Assembly (NCBI GenBank): GCA_002189035.1
Contig: NEEC01000021.1
Coordinates: 1,116,001-1,180,000 of the forward strand
Origin: Utricularia gibba
Lineage: Eukaryota > Plantae > Magnoliophyta
Direction: 5' to 3'
Length of the DNA: 64,000 bases
Shown: in pieces, positions 35,851 to 49,909 of the stretch
How positions within the stretch are numbered: position 1 is the first letter of the stretch
Layout: each line of letters opens with the position of its first letter
The notes under the pieces: generated by a model
Databases searched by the model: none
Told to the model about the DNA's origin: nothing
What the model saw: only the letters and a program-made list of their open reading frames with translations
Position numbers and translations under genes: made by a program

Positions 35851-36306
35851 TTGATATAAAACAAAACAAAATTTTGAGGAAAATTGTCAAATTTCAAGGA
35901 TATTTCATTGAAAATTAAAACACTACTTGGAGATGCTAAACTAGATTGATTAACCTGTATAAAATGTCTTTTTTTTAACCGAAATTGATATAATTAGAAA
36001 AAAAAACTAAGTACAATTTAATTTGGGTAAAACACTGTGCAATACTTGGATGTAATGTTCAAATTTCGAATGTGATAAATCAAACAAACTTTGAGGAAAA
36101 TGATCAAATTGGAAGAAATTTCGAGAATAATTCCCTTTTGGAAATGAATTAAAATTCTAAATTTCGATGAAATTTAAAACATTGTTTAGATGGGGATGCT
36201 AAATTAGGTCCACGAATCAATAAAGTTTTGATTTTTTTTTTTTACAAAAGTTTAGTATTAAAATCGATATAATTAGAAAAACCCTAAATACGAGTTAATT
36301 TGGGTA
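35851..36306 (+). repeat. Diverged tandem duplication (~180 and ~235 bp copies) in the ROH1 proximal promoter
   Basis: Collinear shared blocks between 35851-36029 and 36071-36306: aaacaaa(att/ct)ttgaggaaaat, gg(a/g)gatgctaaa(c/t)tag, aaat(t/c)gatataattagaaaaa...ttaatttgggta. Confidence 0.75.
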
Positions 36307-36447
36307 TATTTTTAGGATAGGTTTCGTGTGCAGATTTAGTATGCTTGCTATTAATAGTCATTCAACGAGTGGAAGCTAAAGAAGACTACCAGCCAATTAA
36401 TTCAGACAAAATTTTCATGCATGAAATTGGATTGAAGGCCATCAGCA

Positions 36448-37695
36448 ATGCCCGATGTTGACAACCAAGGCTCCTTCCTCAACCTCCTCAGCATCCGGCG
36501 TGCCCAAGTTTCCATGGTGGACAACGATCAAGAGCTCGAGGACATCGAGCTTCTCCAGAGACACGTCGCGCATCGCTTTTCTACCCTTTTGGATTCTGCA
36601 GAGTCGATGAACGCCGACCGGGAAGATCCCCCTCCGCCGCTTCTGTCTGTTGCATGGCTGCGTGATTTCCTTGATGTTTTCCTGTGTTGTGAGGCGGAGT
36701 TCAAGGCGGTGCTTGTTTTGGGACGAGATCAGTCGCAGTTCTCCAAGCCGCCCCTCGATCGCCTCCTCCCTGAGTTTCTTGAGCGGGTGGTGAAGGCGCT
36801 TGATGTCTTCCATGCTCTGTCTCATGGTATAGACCTTCTTCTCCAATGGATGAAGCTTGCGAAGGTCGTCGTTGCATCTCTGAATCATAATCCCCTGGGA
36901 GAGGGTCAGGTTGTTAAGGAAGGCTCAACGCTTTGACTGTTTGTATCGACCCAGACTAATACTCTCGCGCAGGTCCGTCGTGCGAAGAGGGCTCTATCGA
37001 CTCTTCTAACTTCGATGGCTGTCGATGATCGGGAGAACGGGATTGCCGGAAAATGCACCGAGAGACATTGGTCTTCAACCCACAGCAAAAGCAAGAAGCA
37101 TCACCACCAGGCGGCGAGCTTCCGGCCGCTATCATCCCCGGTGGCGAAATCCTGGTCGGCGACGAAACAAATCGCGGCTGCAACGATGAATCTTGCAGCA
37201 CCCCGTGGCGTCGATTCGACAGGCCCCGCAGTTCCCGTCTACATAATGAACAACGTGCTGGTGTTCGCTATGTGGGTTCTAGTGGCCGCACTTCCATGCC
37301 AAGAAAGGAACGGAATGGCGAACCATCTCCCATTTCCAAAGCAGCTTGTTTGGGCGCAGCCAATGAGTACCCTTCATGAGAAGATCGGCGAGGATTGGAA
37401 GAGAAAGGAGAAGAAAGGGACTGCGGGATTGCTGGAAGAGGTCCAGAGGATGGAAAAGGTGGCTCATTCAATTGTTGAATCTGTGGACTCATTCGTGTTC
37501 CCGTTAGAGGAGGAGAAGGCTGCCGGCTTGGCGGCTCAGGCCAAGGAGCTCGAGGAGATATGCAAGAAGATGGAGGGGCTGTCGCCATTGCAGCAGCAGC
37601 TTAGAGAAGTTTCTCATAGGATGATCAGAAGCAGAGCTGAGATTTTACAAGCTGTTGAGCAGGCCACCAGGTCTTCTGCACCTGTTCTGTACTGA
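36448..37695 (+). CDS. ROH1: ROH1-like protein (DUF793/BPS1 family); two exons, intron 36910-36972
   Basis: NQGSFL..SIRR, FLCCEAEFKAVL..GRD, KPPLDRL, then VRRAKRAL after a 63-nt GT-AG intron, WSATKQI, PCQERNG, IGEDWKRKEKKGTAGLLEE, QQQLREVSHRMIRSRAEIL. Confidence 0.9.
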
Positions 37696-38434
37696 ACAAT
37701 TCTTGTGGCTCAAGTGTTCATAATGTTCCATAGTTCAACCAGAATAATCCACTTTAATTCTTCATGGTGGAATTGAGTTTTTAACCATCATCATCCTCAA
37801 CTCAATCTTGGGATCCCTGTCGGATTCTTCGGTAATTGATCACAGAATCCTTGATTTCATCTAAATAACCTATCAAACAATGTGAGAATCCTAATGATAT
37901 CACACTTAAATACGTTATTTTAAAGTATTTCTCTATATCCCATTATTTGAAATAGTTTTAGAGAAAACTATCTCGATAATATGCTTTTAAAATCCGTTTT
38001 TTTCACCTTTTTGCAGATATAGTTTTTTAGGTTTTAGAATCTTATTAAATTTTAATATAATCTAATAAATTAGAATCCTATATGTATGTGAAATCCTATT
38101 CATTTTCGAACTCATCAAGGTCAATGGATTGTTATTTTATATAAATTAATTGAAAAGTACTTCAACTAATAATGTGAGAAACTTAATTCTTATCAAATAC
38201 AATAATTTCCAACAGAACCATCGGAAAATCGGAAGGCATAAAAAGATCCAAACTTCTAAAACACCTGACTAAACGGGCTCCGTCGGGGCTATGCATCAGA
38301 AATTCAGGCCTGTGAGGGTAAGGAGCTGGGCTGGTTGGCCCTGACCTGTGTAATAAAAAAAGAAGTCAACGTCTATATAACCGTTGCCTTAAACCCGTTG
38401 ATGAGTGCTGTGTCGTTCTGTTCGACATTGGCTT

Positions 38435-38442
38435 AAACCCTA
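38435..38442 (+). promoter_or_regulatory. Telo-box (AAACCCTA) 20 nt upstream of the twin-CX9C gene ATG
   Basis: AAACCCTA is directly visible; a TGGGCT site II motif lies upstream at ~38327. Confidence 0.55.
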
Positions 38443-38461
38443 GAAATCTGTCACCGTTCTC

Positions 38462-39192
38462 ATGGAGACTTCGCGTAACAAAATGCAGCTTGTTTGTGGG
38501 AAAGAAGCCCTTGATCTGCTCAACTGCGTCTCAGAATCGCCCTACGATCAGCAGAAGTGCATCCTCCTTCTTGAAGCCTTGCGCCAATGCGTTGTTAAGA
38601 GGGTAAACCAACAATCATCATTTTTGAGTTTCTGACCCAGAAAGATTTTTCGTTGCTGAGGGCGATTCTTGGTAGTTTATTTAAGCCGTGATTATTGTTG
38701 ATGCGTGAGGTGTAATTGAGGGCAACTTACACCACCATGGTTTTCAAGCTGACCAGTGATTGTTCGTTGGCTCCTCTGGAAATGGAGTTTCTAGTAACCA
38801 GTGATAGTTATAGTAACTATGGGAGCATGAATTCTTGAAACTTGCAACTACTGCTTTATAGTGACAAGGCTGATGGTGCCCTGGGGGGTTTTATGTTAAC
38901 TAGATTGTTCTGATCCAACTTGGTAGCTATGTTCTGTCTTTCCTAGATTGATTTGATCAAATTTTGTAGTATGGTTCGCTTGGTGGTCTCTGATGATGCC
39001 AAAATCACCATCATCATACAGACTAATTATTGACTACATTCTTATTCTCCTGGAGTGGAATAGCACCTTTTCTGCAGTTTATCTTTTCATGCTGAGCCTG
39101 TTTGGTATAAATTGAGTGTTTCTTTTCAGAAAGTGAAGAAGTTCTCTCTTGCTGATCAAGGTGAAGAAGCAAAGCAAATAAAAAATCCCTGA
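38462..39192 (+). CDS. 67-aa twin-CX9C (CHCH-like) protein, probable mitochondrial intermembrane-space protein; exons 38462-38602 and 39130-39192
   Basis: METSRNKMQLV-CGKEALDLLNC-VSESPYDQQK-CILLLEALRQC-VVKR|KVKKFSLADQGEEAKQIKNP*. Two exact C-X9-C motifs; AGG|GTAAAC donor and TTTTCAG| acceptor in phase 0. Confidence 0.8.
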
Positions 39193-39623
39193 GTTTTCCG
39201 GAAGTTGGGATATAACTATTCAATGTGGGATTCACTCCCCGCACAAGCACACTCCTAATGACACGCTGGTTCATTTTTGTACTACAGTTGAACCCGGATA
39301 CTCGAATCGACGCCATTTAAGTGGTTGTGGAAACAACCAGACTGCATATGAGAATTAGATACCATTTGGGAACTGTTTGAAATCTTCTGATATGGTTGGT
39401 GTTGTTTGTGTTCGTTTTCAATTCACACTGCAGTGCAAAACCTTATTTCAGAGGTTCATGTTACAGAGGCCTAAATCCAGGAATCTATGAGAATATCAAC
39501 TGTTGCAGCTTTGCTGTGATGGTGTGTTTGTTTCGGCATTTGGTGTTCTTGGCTCATGATCTTTATAGTGCCATTTTGCTGTTGTTGGTTCATGATTGGC
39601 ACCAAAAGGGTCATAAATATCGC

Positions 39624-41425
39624 CGGCTCCGGGTTACATCCACCCTGTGGATCTACATGGATAGTCTGGGCTAGAGAACATCAAAAGTGTATTGGGCTGC
39701 CTTTAGCATGTGGGCTGGGCTATATCCCGTAAGTGCCGAACCAAATACTTAGGCTGGGCCATCGCTAGATGCCAGATGGGCTTCATTTTGTGTTCGGGCA
39801 AAGCTGCACTTAGTGCGTGGGCTGGCCACATCAATAGCTGGACTGGGGATTAATTTACTGTTCAGTCTGGGCCATGCTAAAATCTGAGCTGGTCTATTGC
39901 TATTCTATGGGCTAGGCTTCATTCTGTATTCGGGCTGGACCTCACCACAAAGCTGGTCTGGGTCGCACTTAGTGTTTGGGCTGGGTTACATCCTGTACGT
40001 TTGATGGGCTGCATATAACATGTGGGCTGGGTTCGGGCTGACCCTTTACAAATATATGGGCAGGCCGTAGCCAGTAGATGGGCTGGGGTCGAAAAAGTGC
40101 GTGGACTGGGGCTTATTTAAGTGTTTGGACATGACCGCACCAAATAAGTGGGCTGGGTCTCACCTTGCTTTTGAGCTGGTCGATATCCACTACGTGGGCT
40201 GGGCCGCATAAAACATATCGGCGAGGCATCGTTTTTGTGTTCGGGCTGGGTCGAAACAAATCTAGGCAGGCCTGCATTTAGACTTTGGGCTGAGCCGCAT
40301 TGAACAGGTATCTGAGCCGTGGCAAGTAGGCAGGCTGGGCTGGGTAGCACATAGATTGTGGGTTGGTCGCACCAAATAAGTGGGCCGAACCAAATGTTTG
40401 ATCTGGGCCGCACTTAGCTTATGAACTCTGCTACATCCTGTACGTGGGTTGGATCATTAAACATGTGGTCTGGGCTTCATCATGTGGGGTGGGTCGAATA
40501 TAATACTTGGGCTGTCCCGCATGACGCGTCTGGGCGGGGCCGTAGCTAGTAGGCGGGCTGGTCTGCATTTTACATTCAGGCAGGCACGAACAAATTGGGT
40601 TAGCCTACTTCCCATACGTGGGCTGGGCATCATTTTACTGTTCGGGCTGGACCGCACATAATACTTGGGCGGGGCCGCAAATATCATGTGGGCTAGGCTA
40701 TATTTATTTTGTGTACTGGGCTGCATTAATTATTTGGGCTGAGTTTCATTTTGTGTGCGAGATGGGCCTCATTTAGCTTGTAGACTGGGCACCAGGTGGA
40801 CTGACCGCATCTAGTAGGTGAACTGGACTTAATTAAGTGTTCGGGCTGGGCCGTAGCTAAAAGATGGGTTGGGCTTCGTTTTGTGATCGGGCTGGGTCGC
40901 ACCATATCCTTGGGCATACTCTTAGTTATACATTGGGCGGGGCCGTATCTAGTGTGCGGACTAGGGCTTAAGTGTTTGGGCTTAGTCGCATCGAGCATGT
41001 GCGATGGGCCGTGGCTCGTAGGCAGGCTGGGCACCACTTTACCGGGCTGAGTCGGACTTAGATTGCGGGTTGAGCTCCATCCATCCAAGATGTGGGCGGG
41101 GCTTTGTGTTTGTGTTCGGGCTTGTCATACCAAGCACATGGGCTTGGCAGCAGCAAGGCAGTGGGCTGGGCTGCCTTTAATATGTGAGCTGTGCTACATT
41201 TGTGTTCGGGCTGGTCCGCACCAAATACTTGGGCGGGTCCACATTGAACATCCGGGCATGGCCTTAGGTATTAGGTGGGCTGGGCCGAAGTCAATATATG
41301 GGCGGGGCATCATTTTTGTTAGGCCGAGCCGCACCAAATACCTGGGCCGGACCGCATTAAGCGTCTGGGCTGCGCTGCATCTTTTAGGTGGGCGGGGCTG
41401 CATACAACTTTGGGTTTATCGGCAT
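39624..41425 (+). repeat. ~1.8 kb degenerate minisatellite-like array; 23-24 bp units with core YGGGCTGGGCCGCA plus variable spacer
   Basis: GGG-register positions at 40620, 40644, 40667, 40690, ~40713 and 40736 (spacing 24,23,23,23,23). All cores lie on the + strand. About 70-80 units, estimated from length/period. Confidence 0.9.
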
Positions 41426-41602
41426 TCGTGAAAAAAGTTGCAGTTTGGTTATCTGAGAAGAACAATTTCGGAAAAGGGCGGCCCAGTTTTTGTTATACGA
41501 GGCAATCTTTTTTATTTACAAGATGTCGTTGCTCTAGTTTTATCTGAGAACAATTTCTGGATTCGATCTGCCGTGATCAAGTTCCCATTTTTATGCTCAC
41601 CG

Positions 41603-44501
41603 ATGCCGACGAGTCAATCGGAGTTGTCCACAGAGCAGGTGTGTTTCTTGATTAAGCGGTCGTTGGCAGAAACTATTGGTGGATTGTCCCTCTGTTTTTC
41701 AAGTTAGGATTTGCTTGTGTTTCCTTTCATACGTAATTGTGACAAGAGCTGGTGTTTGAAGGTTGTTTATTGGGGAAATGGGTCCATAAGTTGACAGTAT
41801 GATTTTCACATTTTGGTTTTTTGGTTAATTGAAGGTATTGAGGAGGGATATCCCATGGGAAACATATATGACGACGAAGCTGATAACAGGAACAGGGCTT
41901 CAGCTGCTGCGACGGTACGATAAGAAGCCCGAGAACTATAAGGCTCAGTTGCTTGATGAGGTAATCCTCCTGCTAATGTGTGTATTTGTGTGTGTGATCC
42001 AGCTTCCATAAGATTTAAATGGTCGATATTGTACGCTGATCCGTTTTGTATGCAATGAATATGTAACTTAGTTAAAATGTCGAATTTCCAGTTGGTGTTG
42101 GTAAATAGAGCAAATCCATCGAGAACCTAGAGAAAGTTTTCTGTTTTTCAGGATGGTCCATCTTATGTTCGCGTTTTCGTCAGCATTTTGCGTGACATAT
42201 TGAAGGAGGAAACTGTGGAGTACGTTTTGGCTTTGATTGATGAAATGCTTTCAGGTAAGTGATAACACTGGTGATGTTTCCAAGTTTTTGGGATGAATAG
42301 GCTGATCTGTTGAAATCTTTTACATTGCAGCAAACCGAAAGCGAGCAAGATTGTTTCATGATAAGGCTCTTTCTGATGAAAATGTATACGAACCTTTTCT
42401 GAGGCAATGATCTGCTATCTTAGACTGTGCATTCATTTGTTCCTTTCAATTTAAACTAGATCTTCTAATGTCTCTTCTCGATGGTATTGATCTGTTGATC
42501 AATGCTTAGTGTTATCAAGTAAAAAAAGAAAGGTAGTGTAGAATAATTGTTATTTTTCAAAGATGGTGTACTTTTAGAACCTTTTGGTGCCAATCATGGC
42601 CCTATGCGTTAGTGTTGTTTTCACTTATTCAAATGTCTCACCATTTAATATATGCAGATTGCTCTGGAAAGGTAACTGGTTTATACAAGAGAAGAGCTCT
42701 AAACTTCTTTCTCTGATAGTGAGGTAAAATGTATGGGATTATCCCTCCTTCACCTGTCTTTTCTCCCGACATCATTTTCTTGCTTCCAGTGAAAGACCAC
42801 AAATTGAGGATTTGGTTGTTGCAAATGGATCATCAAATTCAAAGAAAGCGATTACTACAATACCTGATGTTTTGAAGGGCCTAGTTGATTGGCTGTGCTC
42901 ACAGGTTTGCATTCCGTTATCTATTTATTTTTCTTGGTATGAAGGCTACTTTTCTTGAGACATCCCTACGTATAAAGCTTCACTAACTACAATTTGGCAC
43001 ATAGAATTCGTACAAGCACTCACATTTGAAAACTGGTAGAAACATCAAAAATTTCGGAATCCTAGTATCTTAGAGAATTATGAATATATTTTTGTCTCTG
43101 TTTCTTAAGTTGAGTGTATATTTTCTCCGGACAAGTCAACTGTACGAAAGATATGGATGATAATGGTCTAATTGATACGCATTGCATTTTGCACTTCGCA
43201 GCTGAGGAGTCCTAATTCTAGTCATGGCATACCAACTGCCATTAATTGCCTCGCAAATCTACTGAGAGAGCCTGAAGTGCGATCTTTGTTTGTGCAAGCA
43301 GATGGAGTAAAGTTGCTCATTCCTCTAATTTCTCCAGCATCAAGCCAACAATCTATTCAGGTAATATCAAGGATTTTGATAGGGGTCATTATGCCTGCAT
43401 GTGTCTGCACTCTACATGTAGTACATCAACTTTCTAAAACAAGTCCATGAGCCCCCTTTATCACAGCTCTTGTATGAGACCTGCCTTTGTGGCTGGCTAC
43501 TCTCGTACTATGAACCTGCAATTGGGTATTTGGCTACTTCAAAAGTCTTGCCACGATTAGTTGAAGTTATTAGAGGATCCACAAAAGAAAAGGTACTATT
43601 CTAGCCTTATTTGGTTATAATAATTGCATCAGTAATGGCCTACTATTTCTCTAGGATCTTTGTTTATTTTTTTTTCATCCCTCCATGACTCTGACCATTT
43701 AATCTCACTGTAGGTTGTAAGGGTGGTTATCTTGACTCTCAGAAATTTGTTACAAAAGGGCACATTCGGAGCTGACATGATTGAACTTGGGTTGCCACAG
43801 CTAATTCAGAACTTAAAAGCTCAGGCATGGAGCGATGAGGTGAAATGCTATTTTAAGCCGCAAATTCCCATAGTAGACGTTGTTTAGCACACAAGATTAG
43901 AGATTAGCCTGCCAAAAATAGGACCTTGGAGAGGGTCTCTGGAATATCCAATATCACTAACTACGTATTATTCTGAAGGATCTGCTTGAAGCTTTGAATC
44001 AAATGGAAGATGCACTCAAGGATAAAATCAAGAACCTCAGTTCTTTTGACAAGTATAAGCAGGATGTCCTCCTTGGCCGTCTAGATTGGTCACCTATGCA
44101 TAAGGATCCTGTATTCTGGCGTGAAAATGCTACATGCTTTGAAGAGCATGATTTTCAGGTAGAATCCTCCACCTACATAACACATGTACTGAGCTTCATC
44201 TGGCTTCTTGGCAAGATCATTCCTTCTAAGCTGATGCGTTGCGATCATGCAGATTTTAAGGGTCCTCATCACAATTTTGGACGCATCAACTGATCCCAGA
44301 ACACTGGCAGTAGCTTGCTTTGATCTGTCACAGTTCATCCAGTACCACCCTGCAGGGCGCATCATCCTGACTGATCTCAAAGCTAAAGAAAGAGTTATGA
44401 AGCTGATGAACCATGACAACTCCGAGGTTACTAAGAACGCTTTGCTCTGCATTCAAAGGCTGTTTCTGGGTGGTAAATATGCGAGCTTCATGCAGGCCTG
44501 A
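41603..44501 (+). CDS. VHA-H: V-type proton ATPase subunit H; multi-exon
   Basis: [12 protein letters not shown]|[94 protein letters not shown]. One GC-AG intron at 42404-42657. Confidence 0.96.
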
Positions 44502-45202
44502 TTGTTGGTTCCTGCAACTTGTTAATTTGTGGAAAAAAAGTGTGTGAAGTTTCCTTTCCACATACATTATATGTGTAACTCTGTGACAAGTTCCAAGGAA
44601 TAAGCTGAATTCTGTCATGTTCACACTGCTGGTGAAGGAGCACTGAGTTGCCTTTTCATTACAACTAAATGAATCTACTCATTTTCATAGACTTCATCAG
44701 AACTCATAGCATACCAGCGAAATGATGATGTATCATGCCAGCTTGGAACCAGTTATCAAAAATAGCAAACCAATGAGTCATTAGACACTTCTAAACCAAA
44801 CCGAAGCAAACCAAAAAGACTAACAGAACCGATATGCACGATACATTGTCCATGCCGCTAGCCGAACTTACCAAGTAAACACATACATTCACATGCAGTT
44901 TTGCTGCTAAACGAGCTCAAAAAATCAAAACAGATACAAAAAAATAAGCACCCTCCCGTACAAAATCATGCCGAGCATACACAACAAAATGCGATGCACA
45001 TTGTTCATATATCTCTAGAACTCGGGAGATGGGGTGCTTGAAGATTTAGACAGCCATCTTGATTCTTTTGAGGAGGATTCCCAGACAATCTAATATATCT
45101 GCTGAGAGACCTTTGCTACATCAAGTACAACCATAGTCAGAAGCATATGCAAGAACCAAGTACCTAAAAAGATGTATCTTGATCCCTCATCTGAGCACTG
45201 CT

Positions 45203-46857
45203 TTACTCGGCAATGCCAGGGCGTTGCAGGAGAGGCTGTGATGGAGGATCATCGTTCTCATGCGAGCAGATATCCAAATTAGATTTGGAGATAAAATGTG
45301 ATTGCTCTTTTGAGTCGAGGAACAGGCAGACCACTGCACAATCATCAATCTTTGCATTTGGATACTTGGATTTCCAAACCTTAATGGCAGAAGCAACCAC
45401 ACTACGAGCTGCGAGTGATCTTTTGGGGCAAGAACCAACAATCTTCACCACTTGCTCATTCGAGAGGACATCCCAGATCTAAGAAATGGAGGGCAAAACA
45501 GTCTGAATATTTCTTCACTTAAGGGACAACAGAATGAAAAAGAACTCATACCCCATCTGTTGCTAGGATCACGAGTTCATCCTTGTTGGAAATACACTTG
45601 CAAAGTATATCAGGCGTAGAAATAACACCAAAATCTTTGAGACAGAAATCTCCAAATGCACGGGTCATGGAAAGCCCTGGAGAGTTAGTTTTTGGCAGCC
45701 ACACTCGTTCAACATCAGGTTCATCCTTGAGTGCGAAAACACGTCCTTTACATTTCTTGATCCTCTCTTTTTCAACTACAGGAAGATGCTTCAAATTACT
45801 AGGAATCACCTAAATTTATGACAATAGGTACTAGTGGACGCATATCCAAAAGCCTAACCATGGTCATTGCAGCAAAAAGAACTCTTAAGATTATTATGGT
45901 TGTGGAGAAGCATACCTGGAATATTTGGTTTGAGATCCACTGTCAACTGGACTGCAATAAGTGAACCATTTACATCTCTGGTACCCAACACAGCCCTGGA
46001 GTCTCCAAGGTTTCCAATGATGAGATTTTGACCCTAAAAAAGATGGTAATTAGACCATACATAGTTTATAGATAAAGCACAACTCACAGGCTCTCAAAGT
46101 ACCTGTTTCACAAGAACAACTGCTGTTGTTCCACTGCAGAAACTGTTGATGTTTGTATAAGATTTCAATTCCTTGTCCATAGCTTTAAAAGCGTTTACAA
46201 AAGACTCTTTCAACGTTTGAAACCACTCAGAAGGCTTTATACATTCTCCGGCATCAATGGAAGGTCTCACTTCAACATTAAACAAAGAAGCACTTTTGGT
46301 TGGACTTAGCCTGATCTCAGATTGTGTGTTATCGGCCTTTTCAATAATTTCCCAGTGTTCATTCAGTTTCTGAGGAAGAGAATCCCTAACGCACCTTGCA
46401 ACCATATGACCATAAGGTCCATGCCCATCAAAAACCGAACAGAGAACAGTTCCAGCCCTTGAACAAAAGTTCTGAAAATAAATCAATAAGAGTTTCTTGA
46501 ACCTCATATGCAATGTAAGGCCCAAGTTTACATCCGCATCATCATGATCCTCGAGCAACTAGAACAAACTGTCGATTATAAAGTCAAGCAAAAGTGAAAA
46601 GAGCTAACCTCCCAAACAATCATTGCATCTTGATTGATTCCTTTCTTGCCTTGCAAAGTAAAGAGTGAGGCAATGTCACTGGAGCCATTCAAAAACATCC
46701 GCCCAGGAAGCTTGTGCAACAATAACTCCTCCCTTCTGAAGTCGTAGGCTGAATTCAGAGGTTCCACTTTCCTGCTGCGGCCTCCCTTCTTGTTGCTAGA
46801 AGTTCTTGGAGAATCTGGAACGGGATTTCTACCTTCATTTGACAAGCAGGACCTTAT
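45203..46857 (-). CDS. Protein phosphatase 2C, clade E-like; canonical start codon missing (ATA at the MGSC position), true start uncertain
   Basis: GRMFLNGSS..ASLFTLQGKKGINQDAMIVWE, VFDGHGPYGH, SGTTAV, GNLGDSRAVLG, GLSMTRAFGDFCLKDFG, LATDG, DDCAVVCLFL. Confidence 0.88.
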
Positions 46858-48162
46858 CCTGAAGGCCCTGACGATCTTCACTAGGCAATCCAGCCCGGGA
46901 AGCCAGTCATACCACCTATTTTCGGAGTGGGAACCCGTGACATAGGCACAGTTAGCATGTATGTCACAGTTAGCAATGTCACAAGTTATTTGGAATCAAA
47001 CCATCCAACTGTCAGTCAATAAGCACTACAAATGAAAGCATGAACATATCGACGGACGCTTTTGTCCTAAACAGGCTTTTTTCCAACCTCTTGTGCTCAC
47101 CCAAAAACTACAACAAACGCCTTCTCGGCATCATGAAAGAAAATGCATCTCAAACTTTACTCAGCGGGTATTAACAGCGCAACCCCCTTGCGCAATCCAT
47201 CGAAGAAGACAACACCCACAACTAAAGAAGCAAGAAAATACATGCCTTGCAATCATACTTGCAACAGCAATAACAATCAAAGATTAAAAGCAGAAAATGG
47301 AGCGAGAACTCTAGAAACCCACTTCGCAGAAGCCTCCTCATCCGGGTTAACAATCATGCCAACAGAGTATCAGGACCCAGAAGGTTAAGGCGCTAAAGAA
47401 GCGTTCTTCGCGCCTCCGGCTCAATGACTCGGCGAAGAAATCAAATGAGCAAAGCACCCCTTGATCAAATCCTCTGGTCACAAATTACCATAGCAAAGAA
47501 AGATGATTGACTCAATCAAAGGAAGCAGAGAATGATGACCGCAGCGAAGGAATCGCAACACGGCTTCCTTGTATTCTTCGTTTCTTCTTTTTCGAGAAAA
47601 GCGTCCTAAAATATTTCCAACCACACCAAAATCTGATCTTTTCCCTTTTTTTGAGTCCACTACAAAATCCATAGTATCTCGACAACAAAAAAGACAACAG
47701 AAGCACTGTATGTCCCAGATATACAACTCACATCTACGGTGTACTACTAAAAAAAACATACTTGGGTCAAAAGAAAACATCTACAGTGTACTTCTCATCT
47801 CATCTCCCACTTCGGAAAATCTGCTCCAGTTTCCGCATTAATTACACTGCAGTCAGAGATCATTCGGGAATTAGGAGAGATGAGGTCATCATCCTAAAAT
47901 CAACTTCCGACTCAAAACCTAACAATTTGGGAATTTTATTCCTGAAACCTATTTTTAGATTTCCTAATAAAAAAATTACATTCGATATATAAATATTTAT
48001 AAAAATCCAAAATACCTATAAAGTAATTAAAAGACATAATTAAAAAACCATAATTTATAGAAATTAAATATCGTTTTAATGTATATTTGAAAAAAAAAGT
48101 CAAACAGCACAAGCTGGTGTGGTACATTATCGAACTCAGGAGGCAGAGAAGATGGAAGTGAT

Positions 48163-49909
<1,747 letters not shown>

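What the first reader, a model, noticed from the sequence alone, without database searches (positions are those of the whole stretch)
39624..41425. 1.8-kb repeat-spacer array of ~70-80 site II/G-tract units directly upstream of V-ATPase subunit H
Seen: a regular 23-24 bp period. The conserved core YGGGCTGGGCCGCA (variants GGGCGGGGCCG, GGACTGGG, GGGCTAGGC) alternates with 9-11 nt AT-richer spacers that vary far more than the core. All units point one way. The array starts ~430 bp after the CX9C stop and ends ~180 bp before the VHA-H ATG, filling the whole promoter. Known: TGGGCY is the site II element bound by TCP factors, and ordinary promoters carry a few copies (four in the IDI/SIN2 promoter here). 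Inference: core conservation despite spacer turnover suggests selection for a homotypic binding-site lattice, i.e. an amplified enhancer for VHA-H, rather than a neutral minisatellite. Other possible roles are a G-quadruplex/R-loop element (paired GGG tracts on the non-template strand) or a methylation-sensitive switch (CG/CHG in every core).
Basis: partly seen in the sequence, partly recalled or inferred. Interest (0 to 1): 0.82.

Follow-up and report, generated by a model that had tools for sequence, protein, structure and literature searches.

The report
Degenerate site-II-core minisatellite before VHA-H
A real 1.8-kb run of about 78 decayed 23-bp repeats, each built around a G-rich TGGGCTGGGCC core, sits just upstream of a plant V-ATPase subunit H gene; it behaves like a fast-changing, length-variable minisatellite, and there is no evidence that it is a conserved enhancer.

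Summary
From 39624 to 41426 there are about 78 head-to-tail 23-bp units, all on one strand. YGGGC occurs 62 times on + and never on -. The array is too degenerate for Tandem Repeats Finder.

The core (unit positions 8-17) really is better conserved than the spacer. The contrast is 0.25, against 0.05 in uniform-decay simulations.

Evidence for selection is otherwise weak:
- Only 34 of 78 units keep a TGGGCY motif, as many as independent decay predicts.
- The longer TCP consensus GGNCCC is almost absent.
- The 25 listed differences to a second accession split 13 core to 12 spacer, exactly in proportion.
- That accession lacks exactly 34 units, cut in register inside the core.
- The array diverges 2.5-4 times faster than its flanks.
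- No RNA run holds the array.
- VHA-H promoters of three other Lamiales carry only 2-5 site II motifs and no array.
- A canonical G-quadruplex is not possible, and CpG content is at the genome average.

The scan's own unchecked notes list at least four similar arrays elsewhere in this genome, on other DNA.

Best reading: a lineage-specific promoter minisatellite seeded by a double site II element. Only its TSS-proximal units plausibly act on VHA-H. A selected TCP-binding lattice is not excluded.

The parts
39624..41426 (+). Degenerate 23-bp minisatellite of about 78 units, with the G-rich strand on +. Consensus TAGTATGTGGGCTGGGCCGCATT.
   Evidence: Lag-23 self-identity; unit chain; per-column counts; motif polarity.
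40612..40750 (+). Best-preserved run: six consecutive units at 23-24 bp spacing with nearly intact cores.
   Evidence: Unit list with scores of about 16-21.5 bits; lag-23 identity of 0.52 in this 100-bp bin.
39825..40602 (+). 778 bp, exactly 34 units, absent from the allele in DNA run X3. The breakpoint lies between unit position 14 and position 15, inside the core.
   Evidence: An X3 contig at depth 40 joins 39824 to 40603; register and unit count computed.
41200..41426 (+). TSS-proximal units of the array. They carry four intact TGGGCY motifs (at 41276, 41281, 41343, 41366) about 100-330 bp upstream of the first transcribed base seen.
   Evidence: Motif positions; RNA contig start inferred from the depth bins.
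41427..41602 (+). Non-repetitive proximal promoter and 5' UTR of VHA-H, with one inverted site II (GGCCCA, 41480-41485). CpG observed/expected is 1.2.
   Evidence: Sequence; motif hit; CpG; the RNA contig of X6 starts near 41528, inferred from depth.
41603..44501 (+). V-ATPase subunit H gene (VHA-H), multi-exon and expressed.
   Evidence: Exon-by-exon matches to plant VHA-H proteins; spliced RNA contigs with GT..AG joints.
38462..39505 (+). Upstream CX9C/CHCH-domain gene. The coding sequence ends at 39193 and the 3' UTR runs to about 39505, about 120 bp before the array.
   Evidence: Pfam CMC4/CHCH hits on exon 1, below the curated cut-off for this 46-aa piece; RNA contigs 38461-38601 joined to 39129-39505.

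Best explanation
This is a lineage-specific, fast-evolving, length-polymorphic G-rich minisatellite (a promoter VNTR). It most likely arose by tandem amplification of a promoter segment holding a double site II element (TGGGCT overlapping TGGGCC). It lies in the intergenic gap between the 3' end of a CX9C gene and the VHA-H transcription start. The array grows and shrinks by in-register unequal exchange or slippage, with breakpoints in the shared core. Duplication moves blocks of several units, so neighbouring spacers are unlike and spacer subtypes recur at a distance. The last roughly 10 units, with four intact TGGGCY motifs, plus one inverted GGCCCA lie where site II elements normally act, and probably provide the gene's ordinary TCP/site II input. 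The remaining roughly 1.5 kb is probably neutral or nearly so. The better-kept core is best explained by exchange or gene conversion being anchored in the core, possibly with GC-biased repair and weak selection, and not by strong purifying selection on 78 binding sites. Shown: the anatomy, polarity, core/spacer contrast, in-register 34-unit length variant, raised divergence, absence from RNA contigs and absence from three other Lamiales promoters. Inferred: the origin from a site II element, the exchange mechanism, and function limited to the proximal units.
For: Array anatomy and polarity. Run X3 carries an allele 778 bp, exactly 34 units, shorter, with the junction between unit positions 14 and 15 inside the core. 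The two sides share only 3 letters, so a collapse by the 31-letter-word assembler is unlikely. X3 depth over the array (40) equals the flanks (40-45), so these words are single-copy. Divergence from X3 is at least 2.6% in the array, against about 1.1% in the upstream flank and 0.6% in the VHA-H body. Other DNA runs of the same species label hold 0.00-0.27 of the array's words. The listed differences fall 13 in the core and 12 in the spacer, with 52.6% core expected. Intact motifs and perfect cores match independent decay. Adjacent units have less similar spacers than random unit pairs (0.299 against 0.351, p=0.0007). Multi-unit blocks of 100-180 bp align at about 70% identity, with core 0.73-0.84 and spacer 0.50-0.71. 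No RNA contig covers 39522-41391, and no RNA run holds array words. Sesamum, Erythranthe and Olea VHA-H promoters have 2-5 TGGGCY motifs and no periodic array. Site II type hexamers peak at -70 to -110 with a width of about 300 bp (PMC1832190).
Against: The core/spacer contrast is large and has no proven neutral cause. Within spacer subtypes, the half of the spacer not used for clustering is still less conserved (0.50) than the core (0.65). The order of subtypes is not significantly non-random (p=0.32), so a simple higher-order-repeat history is not demonstrated. The polymorphism test has only 25 sites and low power, and the tool listed only its best-supported differences. Anchoring of exchange in the core rests on one junction. 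Similar arrays noted elsewhere in the genome (unchecked) could mean either a shared function or a dispersed repeat family instead of a local origin.
Confidence: 0.5

Rival explanations
1. Selected homotypic lattice. The whole array is kept as a platform of many weak site II/GCCCR sites that concentrates TCP factors and boosts or buffers VHA-H transcription.
For: The core is far better conserved than the spacer, beyond any uniform-decay simulation. Position 8 is a pyrimidine in 76 of 78 units, fitting YGGGC, the complement of GCCCR. The array abuts the core promoter. VHA-H promoters of relatives use site II motifs.
Against: There is no deficit of polymorphism in the core. 44 of 78 units lack TGGGCY, and intact motifs are as frequent as chance decay predicts. 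The TCP consensus GGNCCC is nearly absent, with 0 and 4 matches. A 34-unit indel separates accessions. The array is absent from three Lamiales orthologues. Most units lie far outside the usual site II window, and all point one way although the element works in either orientation (PMC1832190).
Confidence: 0.2
2. A copy of a dispersed repeat family, such as a satellite, rDNA-spacer-derived minisatellite or transposon-internal minisatellite, that landed or spread here. The site II resemblance would be incidental.
For: First-stage notes of this scan list at least four other TGGGCY arrays of 1-1.8 kb in other intergenic regions of the same genome. These notes are unchecked.
Against: There are no terminal inverted repeats and no second copy in the 64-kb window. 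The array's 31-letter words are at single-copy depth in X3. A family-specific pattern found only chance hits in metagenome contigs. I could not read the other arrays, so whether they share units is unknown.
Confidence: 0.15
3. Boundary or spacer element. A polar block of TCP-type motifs insulates the CX9C 3' end from the VHA-H promoter in a very gene-dense genome.
For: TCP motifs are enriched at plant TAD boundaries (PMC12086760). The array fills the gap between two same-strand genes. Gene spacing here is about 2.6 kb per gene.
Against: [quoted passage not shown] The array's length is freely variable. There are no chromatin data.
Confidence: 0.08
4. A G-quadruplex or R-loop element formed by the paired GGG tracts on the + strand.
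For: There are 89 GGG runs on + against 5 CCC runs, and GC skew is about +0.2.
Against: There are no canonical four-tract motifs with loops of 7 or fewer, and only 2 when a central loop of up to 21 is allowed. No transcription through the array is seen that could drive R-loops.
Confidence: 0.04

Closest known systems
GC-rich hypervariable minisatellites (VNTRs) with a shared G-rich core, as first described in human DNA (own knowledge, not tested here)
   Same: Unit of tens of bp, kilobase-scale array, strong G/C strand asymmetry, a short G-rich core shared by otherwise different units, length alleles produced by in-register exchange, and a raised mutation rate.
   Different: Here the units are much more decayed (45-50% pairwise identity). 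Neighbouring units are less alike than distant ones. The core coincides with a plant promoter element.
Site II / Element II / GCCCR promoter elements bound by TCP (PCF) factors
   Same: The TGGGCY hexamer (or GCCCA core) lies close to a TSS of a housekeeping gene. Relatives' VHA-H promoters carry 2-5 copies (PMC1832190).
   Different: Normal promoters hold a few copies within about 300 bp, in either orientation. This locus has 38 TGGGCY and 62 YGGGC over 1.8 kb in one orientation, and the longer TCP consensus GGNCCC is almost absent.
Unstable tandem repeats in promoters that tune expression, such as yeast promoter repeats and human promoter VNTRs (own knowledge)
   Same: A variable-length repeat immediately upstream of a gene whose units contain transcription-factor motifs.
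   Different: No link between repeat number and expression has been shown here.

Membership tests
Minisatellite / VNTR | Head-to-tail tandem units of about 10-100 bp forming an array of 0.5 kb or more | tested here: met
   78 units of 23 bp over 1.8 kb.
Minisatellite / VNTR | Copy-number variation between individuals | tested here: met
   The X3 allele lacks exactly 34 units, in register. This rests on one assembled contig of one other accession.
Minisatellite / VNTR | Neighbouring units most similar, the slippage signature | tested here: not met
   Adjacent spacers are less alike than random unit pairs, p=0.0007. Duplication seems to move multi-unit blocks.
Site II / TCP-binding cis-element cluster | TGGGCY (GCCCA-core) hexamers enriched over background | tested here: met
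   38 TGGGCY in 1.8 kb, against 0.63 per kb (both strands) outside the array.
Site II / TCP-binding cis-element cluster | Position within about 300 bp upstream of the TSS, either orientation | tested here: inconclusive
   Four intact motifs and one inverted GGCCCA lie in that window. The other roughly 34 lie 0.3-1.9 kb upstream, all in one orientation (PMC1832190).
Site II / TCP-binding cis-element cluster | Match to the TCP binding consensus GGNCCC (class I GGNCCCAC) | tested here: not met
   GGNCCC occurs 0 times on + and 4 on -; GTGGGNCC occurs 0 times.
Site II / TCP-binding cis-element cluster | Bound by TCP proteins and needed for expression | not testable with these tools
   Needs EMSA, DAP-seq or ChIP, and reporter deletions.
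G-quadruplex-forming sequence | Four G3+ tracts separated by loops of 1-7 nt | tested here: not met
   0 matches on either strand; 2 when a central loop of up to 21 nt is allowed.
Transposable element or its internal repeat | Terminal repeats, or further copies with the same flanks | tested here: inconclusive
   No inverted repeats of 14 bp or more in 39200-41700, and no other copy in the window. The rest of the genome could not be searched.
Conserved regulatory region | Retained at the orthologous promoter in related species | tested here: not met
   No array upstream of VHA-H in Sesamum indicum, Erythranthe guttata or Olea europaea. Closer relatives were not available, and gene neighbours differ, so strict orthology is uncertain.

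The most novel reading that the evidence does not exclude
This is one member of a genome-wide class of polar minisatellites seeded by site II/GCCCR elements in a miniature, gene-dense plant genome. In that class the conserved core would be kept because the arrays serve as TCP-binding platforms, acting as promoter hubs or insulators between tightly packed genes. Repeat number would then be an evolvable dial on housekeeping-gene expression.
Probability: 0.12. Interest if true: 0.75.

Novelty: new variant of a known kind. Interest (0 to 1): 0.42.

Why it matters
If the bulk of the array is neutral, it is an ordinary though unusually old and decayed promoter minisatellite. It would still be a useful hypervariable marker, and a caution that motif counts alone do not show enhancer function. 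If the core is kept by selection, or if many promoters of this genome carry such arrays, it would show transcription-factor sites being amplified into kilobase lattices in a genome otherwise stripped of non-coding DNA. It would also give a natural allelic series (78 and 44 units) for testing how the number of TCP sites sets the expression of a housekeeping gene.

Tried and rejected
- Tandem Repeats Finder at default settings and at score 30 found nothing. I replaced it with lag autocorrelation and a position-weight-matrix chain.
- A simple higher-order repeat is not supported. No unit lag stands out, and the order of spacer subtypes is not different from shuffled (p=0.32).
- Registration artefact as the cause of the core/spacer contrast is rejected by simulation.
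- Transposon signatures are absent: no inverted repeats and no other copy in the window.
- A coding reading is rejected. The 120-aa ORFs inside the array are repeat translations, and no RNA covers them.
- Synteny through the ROH1-like neighbour failed. The best relative, a Genlisea aurea contig, has different neighbours. The exact-protein look-up for the window's ROH1 ORF found nothing.
- The metagenome scan with a family-specific 18-base pattern gave 10 hits, all in GC-rich or unrelated contigs and none in an array.
- Literature searches for site II minisatellites and for the core string found nothing relevant.
- The organism is coded in the run tables. Protein matches place it in Lamiales, nearest Genlisea, probably a Lentibulariaceae species with a very compact genome. 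This is not proven.

Full report
**Observation**

The region 39624-41426 is a real tandem array.
- Self-identity peaks at lag 23 (0.409 against a mean of 0.259, sd 0.028), with echoes at 46 and 69. The signal is confined to about 39600-41450.
- A position-weight-matrix chain that allows spacings of 19-28 bp finds 78 units from 39660 to 41426. Of the 77 spacings, 46 are exactly 23 bp.
- The consensus is TAGTATGTGGGCTGGGCCGCATT.
- Polarity is complete. GGGC occurs 70 times on + and 0 on -, TGGGCY 38 and 0, and YGGGC 62 and 0. Outside the array the window has 1.56 YGGGC per kb on both strands together.
- Tandem Repeats Finder reports nothing, even at score 30, because units are only 45-50% identical to each other.

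**Core against spacer**

- Consensus frequency is 0.69-0.82 at unit positions 8-17 and 0.77 at position 21. At most other positions it is 0.37-0.64.
- Registration by the core could inflate this, so I simulated 78 identical units decaying uniformly, with indels, and ran them through the same pipeline. The best 10-column contrast was 0.05 on average and at most 0.10 at a matching mean identity. The observed contrast is 0.253. The contrast is therefore real.
- The spacers are not random. They form about 6-10 recurrent subtypes whose two halves, on either side of the unit boundary, are linked. Identity in the half not used for clustering is 0.50 within a subtype and 0.35 between subtypes.
- Adjacent units have less similar spacers than random unit pairs (0.299 against 0.351, p=0.0007).
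- The longest internal alignments are multi-unit blocks of 100-180 bp at about 70% identity. In these, core identity is 0.73-0.84 and spacer identity 0.50-0.71.
- Subtype order is not significantly structured (p=0.32).
- My reading: the array is old, grew by duplication of blocks of several units, and has since been shuffled. This explains part of the contrast but not all of it.

**Tests of constraint**

- The 25 substitutions to DNA run X3 that read laying listed inside the array fall 13 in the core and 12 in the spacer. The core makes up 52.6% of the covered positions.
- Only 34 of 78 units retain a TGGGCY motif (TGGGCC 10, TGGGCT 28).
- The first site is intact in 21 units and the second in 16. 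A hand calculation from the column frequencies, assuming independent positions, gives about 18 and 13.
- Perfect 10-nt cores number 5, against a shuffled expectation of 5.2.
- The extended TCP consensus GGNCCC is almost absent.
- None of these results shows current purifying selection on the motif, although the polymorphism sample is small.

**Population behaviour**

- A 40x contig of X3, another accession under the same species label, joins 39824 to 40603 and so lacks 778 bp.
- The last base before the joint is unit position 14 and the first base after it is position 15. Exactly 34 units are missing, and the break lies inside the core.
- The two sides share only 3 letters, so collapse by the 31-letter-word assembler is unlikely.
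- X3 depth over the array equals that of the flanks, so the array's words are single-copy.
- Divergence from X3 is at least 2.6% in the array, about 1.1% in the upstream flank and 0.6% in the VHA-H body.
- Other DNA runs of the species hold only 0.00-0.27 of the array's words.

**Transcription and promoter geometry**

- RNA contigs cover the CX9C transcript to about 39505, and VHA-H from within the 41392-41578 bin.
- From the bin means and the contig depth of 50.5, the VHA-H contig starts near 41528. This is an inference.
- Nothing covers 39522-41391, and no RNA run holds array words.
- The last roughly 10 units therefore lie about 100-330 bp upstream of the first transcribed base seen. They hold four intact TGGGCY motifs, and one inverted GGCCCA sits at 41480.
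- In Arabidopsis, site II type hexamers peak at -70 to -110 with a width of about 300 bp, and they work in either orientation (PMC1832190).
- Only the proximal end of the array is therefore placed like a normal site II cluster.

**Comparison with relatives**

- The VHA-H exons match Lamiales proteins best, at 75-93% per exon.
- The neighbouring ROH1-like gene's best hit is Genlisea aurea at 63%.
- With about one gene per 2.6 kb, this suggests a compact-genome Lentibulariaceae species. This is unproven.
- VHA-H loci of Sesamum indicum, Erythranthe guttata (two assemblies) and Olea europaea carry 2-5 TGGGCY motifs, in both orientations, in a single 400-bp window upstream of the gene. None has a periodic array.
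- Their neighbouring genes differ from those in this window, so strict orthology is uncertain.
- The Genlisea ROH1 contig is not syntenic.

**Other readings**

- G-quadruplex: there are no canonical motifs, and only two with a long central loop.
- Methylation: CpG observed/expected is 0.63 in the array, 0.67 in the window and 1.2 in the 176-bp proximal promoter. This fits ordinary methylation-linked decay in the array and an unmethylated core promoter, but it is not a test.
- Transposon: there are no inverted repeats and no second copy in the window.
- Boundary element: TCP motifs are enriched at plant TAD boundaries, but TCP proteins are not needed for boundaries in Marchantia (PMC12086760).

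**Leads from the scan**

First-stage notes on other pieces of the same genome describe at least four more arrays of TGGGCY-type units, in other intergenic regions. They are 1.57 kb, 1.8 kb between PEX10 and an sHSP gene, 1.0 kb, and one with a 67-bp higher-order period. I could not read or check them. They make a VHA-H-specific explanation less likely. They also raise the question of whether these arrays form one dispersed family or result from a genome-wide tendency of site II promoters to amplify.

**Verdict**

The array is real, and the conserved core is real. The best-supported reading is a lineage-specific, hypervariable promoter minisatellite seeded by a double site II element. Exchange occurs in register at the core, and only the TSS-proximal units are likely to function (confidence about 0.5). 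A selected TCP lattice (0.2) and a dispersed repeat family (0.15) remain open. Promoter VNTRs and G-rich core minisatellites are known kinds. The site II core, the unlike neighbours and the possible recurrence across a miniature genome make this a new variant and not a new category.

Noticed in passing
window 41603 (run X1, table 7): One X1 contig matches from the VHA-H ATG onward but carries at least 255 unrelated letters upstream, ending in ...CAGCCGGGCCA. It may be a second VHA-H copy or allele with a short promoter bearing a site II motif and no array.
   Followed up: no
window 36910-36972: The ROH1-like gene (36448-37695, Pfam PF05633) seems to have a 63-nt in-frame GT..AG intron containing a stop codon. 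Its own protein is not in the protein collection, and its best hit is Genlisea aurea at 63%.
   Followed up: partly
window 41447-41472 and 41538-41562: An imperfect direct repeat of about 25 bp (…TTATCTGAGAA(GA)ACAATTTC.GGA) brackets the probable VHA-H transcription start region.
   Followed up: no
window 39591-39617 and 42573-42598: A 27-bp inverted match (92.6% identity) between the left edge of the array and a VHA-H intron. It could be chance or a small shared element.
   Followed up: no
window 42723-42820 (run X10): An RNA contig replaces 96 bp with 30 other letters at a VHA-H exon/intron border. It could be an alternative isoform, a paralogue transcript or a strain difference.
   Followed up: no
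window 36000-49000: Gene density is very high, with five genes in 13 kb: ROH1-like, CX9C, VHA-H, a PP2C-like gene on the minus strand and an IPP-isomerase-like gene. The 1.8-kb array is the largest non-genic block in this stretch.
   Followed up: partly
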